This document shows positions 52,401-55,400 of a DNA stretch of 64,000 bases, piece after piece. Made by a program: the position numbers and the translations under genes. The notes beneath the pieces are model-generated. The model was not told the origin of the DNA. It was given only the letters and a program-made list of their open reading frames with translations, and ran no database searches. How positions within the stretch are numbered: position 1 is the first letter of the stretch; every line of letters begins with the position of its first letter. This stretch comes from Botryllus schlosseri (Eukaryota), in the NCBI GenBank assembly GCA_051294905.1, contig CM119378.1, forward strand, positions 8,804,001 to 8,868,000, read 5' to 3'.

Positions 52401-55400
52401 TAGACACGAAAAAGCGAGTGAATTAAAATCGGGCTATAAGGTTTATTGCGGACAAACACCACACAATAATACTATCAACCTGTTAAATCCTTGTCTATCA
52501 TAGCCTTGCAAATTGAAACCGTCGCTTCCAAATTTTTCCGTAGACACATCCGATCTGTTACACGCTACCCTTATGTCCCAATCGGCGTATTTTACACACG
52601 TCCCGTCCCACAAATCTTCCAGAGACATCCCAAGTGGAATATCATCCAGTAACTGGATATGCTGAAAAGAACACAATATCAATTACCAACCATGAAGTTC
52701 CAACCGTCTGATGAAAAATTAGAAGGTGCAGAAAAACAAGCTGGTTTGCAATGTCATAAATACAATTTAAATCTATCAGTTTATTCTGACTTTAAACGAC
52801 GGTGAAATAATAAAGCGATCTATTTATATATATCGGTAGTGCCAAATATTTCCAGTAAAAAGTTGGTTGCATGAAAAATCGAAAAAGTTGCAAAAAGTTG
52901 CATGAAAAAATGGAGAAAAGTTGCAAGAACTGCAGAACTGCATTAGCATGACAAAATCGATGATTGGTAAAATGTCACACACACCATAGCAGAAAAAGTA
53001 TACACACAAAAAAATCTACTTTCAAATACCGAGCTCTGTTAAATTGACCACAGAAATAAACCTGACAGACTTACCGCTAGGTGATTAGTTCCCGGGTGTT
53101 TCTTTTGCCATTCCATAAACACACGATCAATATAAGCATATATCGAATAAAACAGTGGATCGTACGCTTTGCTGGACACGGACATATCCCCACCTTCAGA
53201 TATTAAACGCAGCATTTTCAGACAACAGTGAAAATCTCTATAAATAGCGACACTCACCAATAAAAGTAGTGACATAAGTAACAATAGTCAACAGTCTTGA
53301 GCTCAGTTGTTCGTAGGTCCTGGCGCTCATGGCACTAGCGATGTCCAACATGGTGGGGATTTTGATAGAAGGGTTGAATGTTCTGGTTATACATGGCGTC
53401 CATGGACCTATACATAAGATATATTCATCGTATGCTTTATTTTCCTGCAACCGTACGTATCGCTTACTAGAGTCTCCGTTTCTAATCACACGGAATGGAT
53501 GATCTGGCACGCAAGTTCCTTCGCCCCCAAAAAAGTTGGGTTGCCAGACTATGGATTCGTTGAATCGACCTACAAAAAAAGCCAAAGTTATTTTGATCCC
53601 GAAATAATGAATCACTCTACAACTTAACATCATCAAACCCTGTGCGTTTGTTTCGACAATATAAAGACAAAAGTGTGGAGATGCTATTTGAGAAAAATTA
53701 TTGTAACTATAATCATCACGGATTGCATAGAAGAGGCTGTCACGTATCACATGCAGGAAAACTTCGATATCAAATTAAGAAAAGACGCATTCCATCCAAG
53801 ATAATCACCGCAGACATTTAAAAAGTACGAATAATAGCTAGTTTGTGTACAGAATATGAAGGTTGCTGTCATCACAACATTCACTATTTATATCTTTATA
53901 TCACATTTCACACAATTGCATTTGTTATGTAGGCCTATATTGTTGATTTGTACAGTTGGCAATTAAAGATTCTCTCTCTCTCTCTCTGATAGCAAAAATA
54001 CGTACAAAGAGTTTTAACGCTCCCCTTACCAAGAGTTATCGGCAGAATAAAAGAATTTAAACGGATTGAACAGTCAGACCAAGTTGGCAAAGTATGTGAC
54101 AATCTGATTTACGTACCATGAAATTTCAATTGCAATAATGGCATGATGACAACAAGCAGCTTTGTAGTATACAGTATAATAATTGCAGCGCTATAGAGAT
54201 AATAATGACAGATTACATACAAGAAACAAAGAAAATTAACGGTACATTTGTCAGTTTTACAGAAAATCTATATTCACACAGACAAGGAGTAGTATACTGT
54301 TTCAAATTGTTGATTCCAATACTTTTAAAATTAAACTAGGATATGTCTCCTGGCATTCTGACAATGTCAGTGAACATATCATCATCATAGTTTTGCGCAC
54401 AGGAAAGAGTACTACGAAACAATAACTTCATATTGTTATTTATTCGCTAAAAGCTTTTCGATTGACTCTCGTCAGTAGCGTCAGTAATCGGGTGATTCAA
54501 ATTCGAAATGTAGGAACTACTTTCTAGGAATGTACGACTTACGCGAGTGTAATTACTGTATGACACAAAATTGGAAAATTTCTGAAAGAATTTACCTGCA
54601 TCTTGCGTGAAATCAAAATAAGGCAGCGTCACGTCGCAATCGACACGCTGCAGCTCCATTTCCATGTTCCGCAAAAACGCTCTGTTCCACAGCAAGAAGT
54701 ACCGCGACGACTGTGCAAATAGTAGAGTGTAATTCACTGTTATTTATTTTCGACAGAAAACAACACACCTGTGCGATAGGCATGCTCCTGATGTAGCCGT
54801 CTCGGAACATATCCCACACGTTTTGACCATCGTCGATTTCTTCCGTCTTCAATTTGCGGACTGCAATTTGGAATGACTTCCTTTCCTCGGTGGTAAGACG
54901 GCGTATTTCTCTGCAAAATGTTTGTTTTAACAACGCTCAGAAATGATAGGGATGGTTTGATATTTTAAAATCCAAATGTTGTCGGTCAAAATCCATTTTT
55001 TTCAAATCTCAACACAAATCCATTGTCATTGCTCATCGCAGGAACTGCAGTAATATCAAAAAGTAGGGGCAAGTGAGTAAAATCAACTAATAACCCCAAT
55101 AGCCAACACCACCGCAAAAATGCTGGATAAATCCTGAAATACATGAATATAATATCTATTATAAACGTTTCATTACCCTTACCATTGACTTTTTTCAAAT
55201 TTATCGTGAATGTGCTCAGAAAATGTATTTGCAGGACTTTCTTCAAAAAAGAAATTGGTCACAGTCACATGCCATAATGGTCATGACGTCAAAAGATCAC
55301 ACGAGGGAAGAGTATGCTACTCACCTCCTTACGGATTTGTCGCGGCATCTGCACTCAACGTTGCCATGGCGACAGGTGCATGATCTTCTGCACCCGGCGT

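What the first reader, a model, noticed from the sequence alone, without database searches (positions are those of the whole stretch)
53075..54910. Tyrosinase-like domain 1 has lost all six copper-binding histidines
Seen: the CuA region reads [29 protein letters not shown] and the CuB region reads [16 protein letters not shown]...[12 protein letters not shown]. Established: active tyrosinases use H...H...(W)H(R) for CuA and H-x3-H...DP-x-F-x2-HH-x3-D for CuB (Bacillus megaterium H42/H60/H69 and H204/H208/H231). By manual alignment the six positions are Y, Q, N, V, T and Y, while the fold motifs (RREI, LPYFD, FFGG, GGDM, DP-x-F, WQ) are intact. Inference: a pseudo-enzyme kept for structure or ligand binding, analogous to the hexamerin/cryptocyanin loss of copper in arthropod type-3 proteins but on the tyrosinase branch.
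Basis: partly seen in the sequence, partly recalled or inferred. Interest (0 to 1): 0.8.

Follow-up and report, generated by a model that had tools for sequence, protein, structure and literature searches.

The report
Copper-less tyrosinase domain in giant Kielin-like protein
This is an expressed tyrosinase-fold domain that has lost all six copper-binding histidines, sitting in a giant secreted Kielin/chordin-like protein of a tunicate; it is the end point of a loss that already began in the common ancestor of bilaterian animals.

Summary
On the minus strand at 53075-54910 lies a tyrosinase (Pfam PF00264) domain. Its six canonical copper-ligand positions read Y, Q, N, V, T, Y. The alignment columns were calibrated on a normal tyrosinase of the same genome and on choanoflagellate and fungal tyrosinases, which show His at all six.

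One correction: spliced transcript contigs from three studies show five exons, not four.

The domain is copy 1 of two tyrosinase-like domains in a >50-kb gene for a giant Kielin/chordin-like protein (EGF, Kunitz, Tyr-d1, G[YF][DN] repeats, Tyr-d2, many VWC, VWD). Orthologues occur in molluscs, a brachiopod, chelicerates, echinoderms, a hemichordate, amphioxus, tunicates and, with only the d2-type copy found, vertebrates. In the 42 animal d1 sequences aligned, the first CuA and first CuB positions are never His, and none has more than 4 of 6.

Tunicate relatives keep 1 of 6, and amphioxus also has 0 of 6. The window keeps 33 of 33 (near-)invariant family residues. Choanoflagellate relatives carry the same module with an intact site.

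Verdict: a conserved, non-catalytic pseudo-tyrosinase module, apparently undescribed in the literature. The same scan noted the gene and domain 2 on this window.

The parts
10243..61796 (-). Whole gene for a giant Kielin/chordin-like (KCP-like) secreted protein: EGF repeats, Kunitz, Tyr-like d1, G[YF][DN] repeats, EGF, Kunitz, Tyr-like d2, repeats, many VWC, acidic exon, VWC, VWD and C-terminus. The approximate extent is taken from homology.
   Evidence: tblastn hits are colinear with Lingula P0018 (4202 aa) from 54716 down to 10243. Hits to the tunicate orthologues P0049 and P0034 start at 61785; P0034 reaches 12508, and P0049's chain ends at 19880.
55325..55437 (-). 3' part of the exon upstream of d1. 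It encodes a Cys-rich TILa-like mini-domain ending ...CRCRDKSVR, and supplies the first two bases of the junction codon AG|A (Arg).
   Evidence: Spliced contigs join 55325 to 54910. The Pfam TILa match is weak, 24.9 bits, below its cut-off of 27. Junction codon.
54769..54910 (-). d1 exon 1. It carries the N-terminal helix and the CuA-1 position (Y in DGYIRS) and ends ...PIAQ, where Q is the CuA-2 position.
54596..54710 (-). d1 exon 2: [13 protein letters not shown]...[11 protein letters not shown] of WNR is the CuA-3 position.
   Evidence: Pfam PF00264 30.5 bits; splice joints; pairwise alignment to L001.
53468..53569 (-). d1 exon 3: [33 protein letters not shown].
   Evidence: Splice joints 53567/54594 (cut +2) and 53405/53466 (cut +2); GT..AG ends checked.
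53408..53467 (-). 60-nt intron (GTAAGC...GTATAG), in frame and free of stops.
   Evidence: It is skipped in the spliced contigs of runs X5, X6 and X11. All 16 orthologues lack these residues.
53258..53407 (-). d1 exon 4: PWTPCITR...[12 protein letters not shown]. It carries the CuB-1 (V) and CuB-2 (T) positions.
53075..53193 (-). d1 exon 5: [40 protein letters not shown]. It carries the CuB-3 position (second Y of S-I-Y).
   Evidence: Pfam PF00264 24.9 bits.
52479..52661 (-). Exon downstream of d1: a linker and the first G[YF][DN] pentapeptide repeats.
   Evidence: Spliced contigs join 53075 to 52661; translation.
44081..45499 (-). Second tyrosinase-like domain (d2) of the same gene. It is also degenerate but keeps WHR.
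   Evidence: tblastn of the orthologues' d2; genome-wide PF00264 hit at window 44099-44263; translation.

Best explanation
The stretch encodes the first of two tyrosinase-fold domains of a giant secreted Kielin/chordin-like matrix protein of a tunicate.

Shown: the domain is a true member of the tyrosinase sequence family. It is transcribed and spliced into the mRNA. It keeps every invariant fold residue of its family. All six histidines that hold the two coppers in an active tyrosinase are replaced, by Y, Q, N, V, T and Y.

Inferred: it cannot form a type-3 dicopper centre, so it cannot oxidise phenols. It is kept under purifying selection as a non-catalytic module, either a rigid four-helix-bundle spacer or a docking surface.

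Shown by comparison: the module Kunitz / Tyr-rich G[YF][DN] repeats / Cys-rich knot / tyrosinase / repeats already exists in a choanoflagellate, with all six His. It was duplicated before the protostome-deuterostome split. In the 42 animal copy-1 (d1) sequences aligned, the first CuA and first CuB ligands are already gone. Tunicates then lost CuA-2, CuA-3 and CuB-2. The window's lineage lost the last ligand, CuB-3 (His to Tyr).

Most likely working model (inferred, not shown): the ancestral enzyme acted on the tyrosines of its own flanking repeats. The animal domain retains only a structural or tyrosine/peptide-docking role within a BMP-modulating, matrix-forming protein.
For: - PF00264 matches above the gathering score.
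- A profile of d1 hits molluscan haemocyanin chains at E 1e-14 to 1e-113 and Streptomyces/Bacillus tyrosinases at E 1e-25 to 1e-33.
- The six ligand columns are calibrated on sequences with 6 of 6 His.
- Spliced contigs come from three runs in three studies. X6 and X11 show no differences on these exons, and X5 shows a few.
- The window keeps 33 of 33 invariant or near-invariant residues and 68 of 83 columns conserved at 70% or more. The His columns are lost selectively, p = 7e-4.
- d1 is 54.5% and 51.7% identical to Phallusia and Clavelina, against 41% and 45% for the alignable gene as a whole.
- Y-Q-N at the former CuA site is shared by all three tunicates.
- The proxy model of Phallusia d1 has pLDDT 93.2 and pTM 0.91, with best structural matches to tyrosinases 1wx2 and 3ntm at query TM 0.80-0.82.
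- The gene is colinear with orthologues from many phyla.
- The tree shows d1 and d2 clades that each span bilaterians, and the window groups with tunicate d1.
- Choanoflagellate proteins carry the same module with 6 of 6 His and the G[YF][DN] repeats.
Against: - No metal or activity measurement exists.
- The window's own spliced domain could not be folded, because it has no contiguous reference. The fold evidence therefore rests on a 55%-identical orthologue and on sequence conservation.
- No coordinates were available to inspect which side chains fill the former metal site. His109 (in CVPDHPF) could not be placed.
- dN/dS could not be computed: no close relative was found, and the tunicate orthologues are too distant.
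- The one raw-read RNA run that was sampled (6% of the run) gave no exon reads, so expression may be low or tissue-restricted.
- The docking idea has no support from the complex prediction, which returned no verdict.
Confidence: 0.78

Rival explanations
1. A neutral relic. The domain lost its function when the ligands went. It is still spliced into the mRNA only because removing it has not yet happened, and it is drifting.
For: Tunicates evolve fast, and the tunicate d1 branch is long in the tree. The window differs from the family consensus at 15 of 83 columns conserved at 70% or more.
Against: All 33 invariant or near-invariant residues are kept, and His columns are lost selectively (p = 7e-4). 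d1 is more conserved between tunicates than the gene's alignable average. The reading frame and all GT..AG splice sites are intact. Partly ligand-less d1 copies have been kept across bilaterian phyla.
Confidence: 0.08
2. A remodelled binding site rather than an empty one. The replacement side chains are mostly oxygen donors (Tyr, Gln, Asn, Thr, Tyr). Together with neighbouring residues they might bind a different metal (for example Ca or Zn) or a small ligand, giving the domain a new chemical function.
For: Y at CuA-1 is invariant in every animal d1. Y-Q-N is conserved in the three tunicates, which suggests new constraint at the old site. In most other phyla a fixed subset of His persists (His three residues after CuA-1, CuA-3, CuB-2, CuB-3). 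That pattern looks like a conserved non-canonical site rather than decay.
Against: In the window every one of those retained His columns is also replaced (S, N, T, Y). No geometry could be examined. No known type-3 relative works with such a ligand set (own knowledge).
Confidence: 0.12
3. An artefact: a mis-drawn gene model, a misalignment, or an assembly error creates the apparent loss.
Against: Transcript contigs match the genome on these exons, with no differences in two of the three runs. Three independent alignments agree on the register. Two other tunicates share Q and N at CuA-2 and CuA-3.
Confidence: 0.02

Closest known systems
Arthropod hexamerins, cryptocyanin and pseudo-haemocyanins (type-3 copper relatives without copper)
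   Different: Those belong to the arthropod haemocyanin/phenoloxidase branch and are free-standing storage proteins. This domain is on the secreted tyrosinase/molluscan-haemocyanin branch: its best PDB sequence and structure hits are molluscan haemocyanin units and Streptomyces/Bacillus tyrosinases. It is embedded in a multi-domain protein of more than 3000 residues.
Kielin / KCP (Kielin/chordin-like protein, CRIM2) BMP modulators of vertebrates
   Same: The C-terminal two thirds of the gene is a long VWC array followed by VWD. Databases name the orthologues kielin/chordin-like.
   Different: The N-terminal EGF-Kunitz-tyrosinase-repeat super-module is not part of the described mammalian KCP (own knowledge). 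Among vertebrates, only the d2-type tyrosinase copy was found, in sharks, a chimaera, a salamander, a hagfish and teleost fragments. BMP binding was not tested here.
Active alpha-type tyrosinases (Streptomyces MelC2 1wx2, Bacillus megaterium 3nm8) and the choanoflagellate Kunitz-tyrosinase proteins
   Same: Same Pfam family and same predicted four-helix-bundle core. Conserved motifs are shared: W-x-R, LPY-x-D, GG-x-M, DP-x-F, WQ. The choanoflagellate proteins even share the flanking Kunitz, Cys-rich and G[YF][DN] repeat elements.
   Different: Those have all six His and bind two coppers. The window's domain has none.
TYRP1/TYRP2 (tyrosinase-related proteins with zinc)
   Same: Tyrosinase paralogues with altered metal chemistry.
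   Different: They retain all six His and still bind two metal ions (PMC3658974; own knowledge). Here the ligands themselves are gone.

Membership tests
Tyrosinase domain family (Pfam PF00264), by sequence | Match to the family HMM above the curated gathering score (22.6 bits) | tested here: met
   Exon 2 scores 30.5 bits and exon 5 scores 24.9 bits. A six-frame genome search hits this place at 36.7 bits. A d1 profile hits solved tyrosinases at E 1e-25 to 1e-33.
Tyrosinase domain family (Pfam PF00264), by fold | Central four-helix bundle of the type-3 copper fold | tested here: inconclusive
   Tested only by proxy. Phallusia d1 is 54.5% identical and gives pLDDT 93.2, with query TM 0.74-0.82 to the 1wx2/3ntm tyrosinase group. 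The window's own spliced domain has no contiguous reference, so it was not folded.
Functional type-3 (dinuclear) copper protein | Three His for CuA (H..H-x8-H) and three His for CuB (H-x3-H..H) | tested here: not met
   The six columns read Y, Q, N, V, T, Y. The same columns read H in six reference tyrosinases.
Functional type-3 (dinuclear) copper protein | Copper binding and phenol/catechol oxidase or O2-binding activity | not testable with these tools
   Needs the recombinant protein, metal analysis and a DOPA-oxidase assay.
Kielin/chordin-like (KCP-like) proteins | Long array of VWC (chordin-type Cys-rich) repeats followed by a VWD domain | tested here: met
   Orthologues have 20-30 VWC repeats plus VWD. 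The window is colinear with them through the VWC array (39685 to about 15300) and the VWD/C-terminal region (14774-10243).
Kielin/chordin-like (KCP-like) proteins | Binding and modulation of BMP ligands | not testable with these tools
   This is a biochemical property. It is inferred only from the VWC array.
Pseudo-enzyme domain | Catalytic or cofactor residues lost, yet the domain is expressed and under purifying selection | tested here: met
   Loss of the ligands. Spliced transcripts in three studies. Conservation: 33 of 33 (near-)invariant residues kept, and above-average identity between tunicates. A formal dN/dS was not possible.

The most novel reading that the evidence does not exclude
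The tyrosinase domain and the flanking Tyr-rich G[YF][DN] repeats are an ancient enzyme-substrate pair. In the choanoflagellate-type ancestor, an active dicopper domain oxidised the tyrosines of its own repeats to cross-link a surface or matrix protein. In animals the module was duplicated and fused to a Kielin-type VWC/VWD array, and both copies lost their copper. They survived as tyrosine-docking 'reader' domains that organise self-assembly of the matrix, or presentation of BMP, without chemistry. The window, with 0 of 6 His and no retained non-canonical His, would be the cleanest natural example of the purely non-catalytic state.
Probability: 0.15. Interest if true: 0.8.

Novelty: new variant of a known kind. 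Interest (0 to 1): 0.58.

Why it matters
Copper-free descendants of type-3 copper proteins are a textbook case on the arthropod haemocyanin branch. A counterpart on the tyrosinase branch, embedded in a matrix and BMP-modulator protein, does not appear in the literature I could search.

The standard survey of type-3 copper proteins even reports none in sea urchin (PMC3658974). Yet sea-urchin orthologues of this gene carry the domain. A 2024 tyrosinase survey mentions the sequences of more than 3000 residues only as outliers (PMC11667028).

The comparative series found here runs from 6 of 6 His in a choanoflagellate, through 1-4 of 6 in most animal d1 copies (1 of 6 in two tunicates), to 0 of 6 in amphioxus and this tunicate. 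It gives a ready-made natural experiment on how an oxidase turns into a structural or binding module. It also shows that the N-terminal half of invertebrate, and some vertebrate, Kielin-like proteins has an unexplored function.

Tried and rejected
- **Complex prediction.** I tested Phallusia d1 (P0049:871-1083) against its following G[YF][DN] repeat stretch (P0049:1120-1205). The result was no verdict: score 0.00 against a mark of 0.34. This is neither support nor evidence against binding.
- **A database copy of the window's own protein.** I looked for one so that the spliced domain could be folded by reference. Three searches found only orthologues, the best at 56% identity.
- **Raw-read RNA run X23.** Only 6% of the run was read. 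No reads fell on the exons, and the few reads laid fell on an intronic repeat. This says nothing about expression level.
- **Pseudogene reading.** Rejected on the spliced transcripts, the intact frame and the conservation.
- **Alternative CuA-1 register.** I considered that the CuA-1 equivalent is the residue three positions later, which is His in most orthologues and Ser here. I rejected it as the canonical position because reference tyrosinases and haemocyanins place their His in the Y column. It remains possible as a non-canonical ligand in other phyla.
- **Alternative donor for the 60-nt intron** (after ...PF): rejected by the contig joints.
- **tRNA-derived element near 62200-62380.** ARAGORN found none.
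- **Pfam search of the G[YF][DN] repeat exons and the linker exon.** No family matched.
- **dN/dS.** Not attempted. The only orthologue DNA would be from tunicates about 50% identical at the protein level, where synonymous sites are saturated.
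Full report
**What is at the coordinates.** The window is eukaryotic DNA with short GT..AG introns. On the minus strand between 54910 and 53075 lie exons whose translation reads (R)[14 protein letters not shown]...[16 protein letters not shown] | [13 protein letters not shown]...[10 protein letters not shown] | [16 protein letters not shown]...RNGDS | S PWTPCITR...[12 protein letters not shown] | [40 protein letters not shown]. Pfam's Tyrosinase model (PF00264) matches the second and the last exon above its gathering score, at 30.5 and 24.9 bits against 22.6. 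A six-frame scan of the whole 495-Mb assembly finds this place at 36.7 bits.

**Transcription and exon structure.** I laid contigs of public runs of the same organism on 52300-55700. Runs X5, X6 and X11 come from three different studies. Each holds one contig that joins 55437-55325 | 54910-54769 | 54710-54596 | 53569-53468 | 53407-53258 | 53193-53075 | 52661-52479, with CT..AC (that is, GT..AG) at every skipped piece. X6 and X11 show no differences from the genome on these exons. So the domain is transcribed and spliced into the mRNA.

The same contigs reveal a 60-nt intron (53408-53467, GTAAGC...GTATAG). All orthologues lack those residues. The mature domain has 209 residues in five exons. 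A sampled raw-read RNA run gave no exon reads, which says little.

**The six ligand positions.** The same genome has a canonical, vertebrate-like, membrane-anchored tyrosinase (L001, a single 679-codon ORF) with YDLFVWMH, AHAGPSFLPWHR, MHNAVH and DPIFIVHHAFVD. BLASTP of the spliced domain against it pairs AQSS..LLWNR with [21 protein letters not shown] with TMHNAVHLFMNG, and [12 protein letters not shown] with DPIFIVHHAFVD.

I then built a 118-domain alignment. Three Salpingoeca proteins, a chytrid tyrosinase and two unnamed fragments show His in all six columns. The window shows Y, Q, N, V, T, Y. A profile of the domain aligned to molluscan haemocyanin units gives the same register, including CuA-1; the FHG histidine falls on the Y column.

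The domain has only three His: one in CVPDHPF and two in the C-terminal tail. It has three Cys, and all three sit in family-invariant or near-invariant columns.

**What gene this is.** An exhaustive HMMER search with one exon, followed by two word-indexed searches, found proteins of 3000-4700 residues that sources name 'kielin/chordin-like protein'. They come from:
- cephalopods, bivalves and gastropods;
- the brachiopod Lingula;
- spiders, a scorpion and Limulus;
- crinoids, sea stars and sea urchins;
- the hemichordate Ptychodera and amphioxus;
- the tunicates Phallusia and Clavelina;
- sharks, a chimaera, a salamander and a hagfish.

Their Pfam content is EGF, Kunitz, two Tyrosinase domains, 20-30 VWC and one VWD. 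tblastn shows that the window holds the gene from about 61800 down to 10243 on the minus strand, colinear with Lingula and with the two tunicate proteins. The closest orthologues are the tunicates, at 54.5% and 51.7% identity over d1. With the 58-64-nt introns, this places the window in a tunicate.

The PF00264 genome scan hit this gene only at the two places inside the window, d1 and d2. The other matches lie elsewhere on contigs C2, C7, C9 and C13.

**Family-wide pattern.** A tree of the domains, rooted on the 6-of-6-His outgroups, splits the animal sequences into a d1 clade and a d2 clade. Each spans protostomes and deuterostomes, so the duplication is older than that split. The window groups with tunicate d1.

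In the 42 animal d1 sequences aligned (27 named species and 15 unnamed fragments), CuA-1 is always Tyr and CuB-1 is never His. None has more than 4 of the 6 canonical His, and none of the named species has more than 3. The states by lineage are:
- **Most lophotrochozoans and the hemichordate.** They keep CuA-3, CuB-2 and CuB-3, plus a non-canonical His three residues after CuA-1.
- **Echinoderms.** They have lost CuB-2 and CuB-3.
- **Spiders and the scorpion.** They have lost CuA-3.
- **Amphioxus.** It has 0 of 6 (K, N, A, N, Y after the Tyr).
- **Phallusia and Clavelina.** They have 1 of 6 (Y, Q, N, V/A, K, H).
- **The window.** It shares Y-Q-N with those two and has also replaced the last His by Tyr, and the non-canonical His by Ser.

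So the total loss here is the end of a staged process, reached independently of amphioxus. d2 is degenerate as well in every animal.

**Is the domain still constrained?** I added the window to an alignment of 42 d1 sequences and 4 outgroup tyrosinases.
- It keeps 15 of 15 invariant and 18 of 18 nearly invariant columns, including W-x-R, the LPY-x-D motif, the conserved Cys residues, GG, DP-x-F, D and WQ.
- It keeps 68 of 83 columns conserved at 70% or more.
- Four of the 15 differences are exactly the four His columns in that set: 4 of 4 against 11 of 79, Fisher p = 7e-4.
- Identity to the tunicate orthologues is higher in d1 (52-55%) than over the colinear alignable parts of the whole protein (41-45%).

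This is the signature of selective removal of ligands on a conserved scaffold, not of decay. A formal dN/dS could not be done for lack of close relatives.

**Fold.** The window's spliced domain has no contiguous reference, so I did not submit it. As a proxy, Phallusia d1 (1 of 6 His) was predicted with a 46-row alignment and gave pLDDT 93.2 and pTM 0.91. Foldseek places it with Streptomyces and Bacillus tyrosinases (E about 1e-10, query TM 0.74-0.82), ahead of fungal catechol oxidases, molluscan haemocyanin and TYRP1. No coordinates were available, so I could not inspect what fills the former metal site.

**Origin of the module.** The Salpingoeca rosetta proteins that served as 6-of-6 references are not plain tyrosinases. 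One of them (P0097) reads Kunitz, G[YF][DN] pentapeptide repeats, a Cys-rich knot ending ...C-x-C...TTRREIRDMT, tyrosinase, more G[YF][DN] repeats, and then a second Cys-rich element. This is the same order as each half of the animal super-module. G[YF][DN] triplets are about ten-fold over-represented next to the tyrosinase domains in every orthologue examined. The pairing of a tyrosinase with Tyr-rich repeats therefore predates animals and was then catalytically competent.

This suggests, but does not show, that the repeats were the enzyme's own substrate and that the animal domains kept only a docking or scaffolding role. A complex prediction of Phallusia d1 with its repeats returned no verdict.

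**Literature.** Full-text searches for kielin with tyrosinase found nothing on these domains. [quoted passage not shown] The 2013 classification of type-3 copper proteins does not mention von Willebrand or Kunitz and reports no type-3 copper gene in sea urchin (PMC3658974). Lytechinus and Diadema orthologues nevertheless carry d1. Kielin/chordin-like proteins are reported in extracellular matrices, in the Argonaut eggcase and the quagga-mussel adhesive footprint. Those reports concern VWC fragments, not shown to be this gene.

**Verdict.** It is not a one-off; it is the extreme member of a bilaterian-wide series. What it binds or supports is unknown. The best-supported reading is a non-catalytic structural or docking module (confidence about 0.78). 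A remodelled non-copper site (0.12) and a neutral relic (0.08) are the rivals.

Noticed in passing
window 53408-53467 (minus strand): A 60-nt intron that is in frame and free of stops, so it reads as coding. Other introns in the domain are 58 and 64 nt. Tiny introns like these can mislead reading by eye.
   Followed up: yes
window 52756-52983 and 54352-54465: Two intronic stretches show very high summed contig depth (about 60-155) in all three transcript-type runs, with many loose ends and small insertions. They are probably copies of a multi-copy, A-rich repeat or mobile element.
   Followed up: no
L001 = G000:C2:17456679-17460452 (ORF 943-2982): The same genome has a single-exon, 679-codon, vertebrate-like membrane-anchored tyrosinase with the copper-site His motifs (YDLFVWMH, AH..WHR, H-x3-H, HH) intact and a C-terminal hydrophobic stretch. 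It is a useful internal reference.
   Followed up: partly
G000 contigs C13 (about 10.86-11.13 Mb), C7 and C9: There are many further PF00264 matches, apparently tandem clusters of tyrosinase genes. Several have stops inside the match, which may be introns or broken copies.
   Followed up: no
proteins P0097, P0098, P0102 (Salpingoeca rosetta): These choanoflagellate 'protease inhibitor' proteins carry Kunitz, G[YF][DN] repeats, a Cys-rich knot, a tyrosinase with all six His, more repeats, and a second Cys-rich element. The animal super-module therefore predates animals.
   Followed up: partly
proteins P0037, P0041, P0043, P0044, P0047, P0052 (salamander, sharks, chimaera, hagfish): These vertebrate kielin/chordin-like proteins still carry one tyrosinase-like domain. 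It falls in the d2 clade and has 0-2 of 6 His. In the echinoderm and amphioxus models only a d1-type copy was found.
   Followed up: partly
window 44081-45499 (minus strand): The second tyrosinase-like domain of the same gene keeps WHR but is otherwise degenerate. The two tunicate orthologues have 3 of 6 His in this copy.
   Followed up: partly
window 33788-34936 (minus strand): A single long, stop-free exon of about 380 codons, very rich in Asp, Tyr and Glu, interrupts the VWC array. It had no counterpart in the colinear hits of the tunicate or Lingula orthologues.
   Followed up: no
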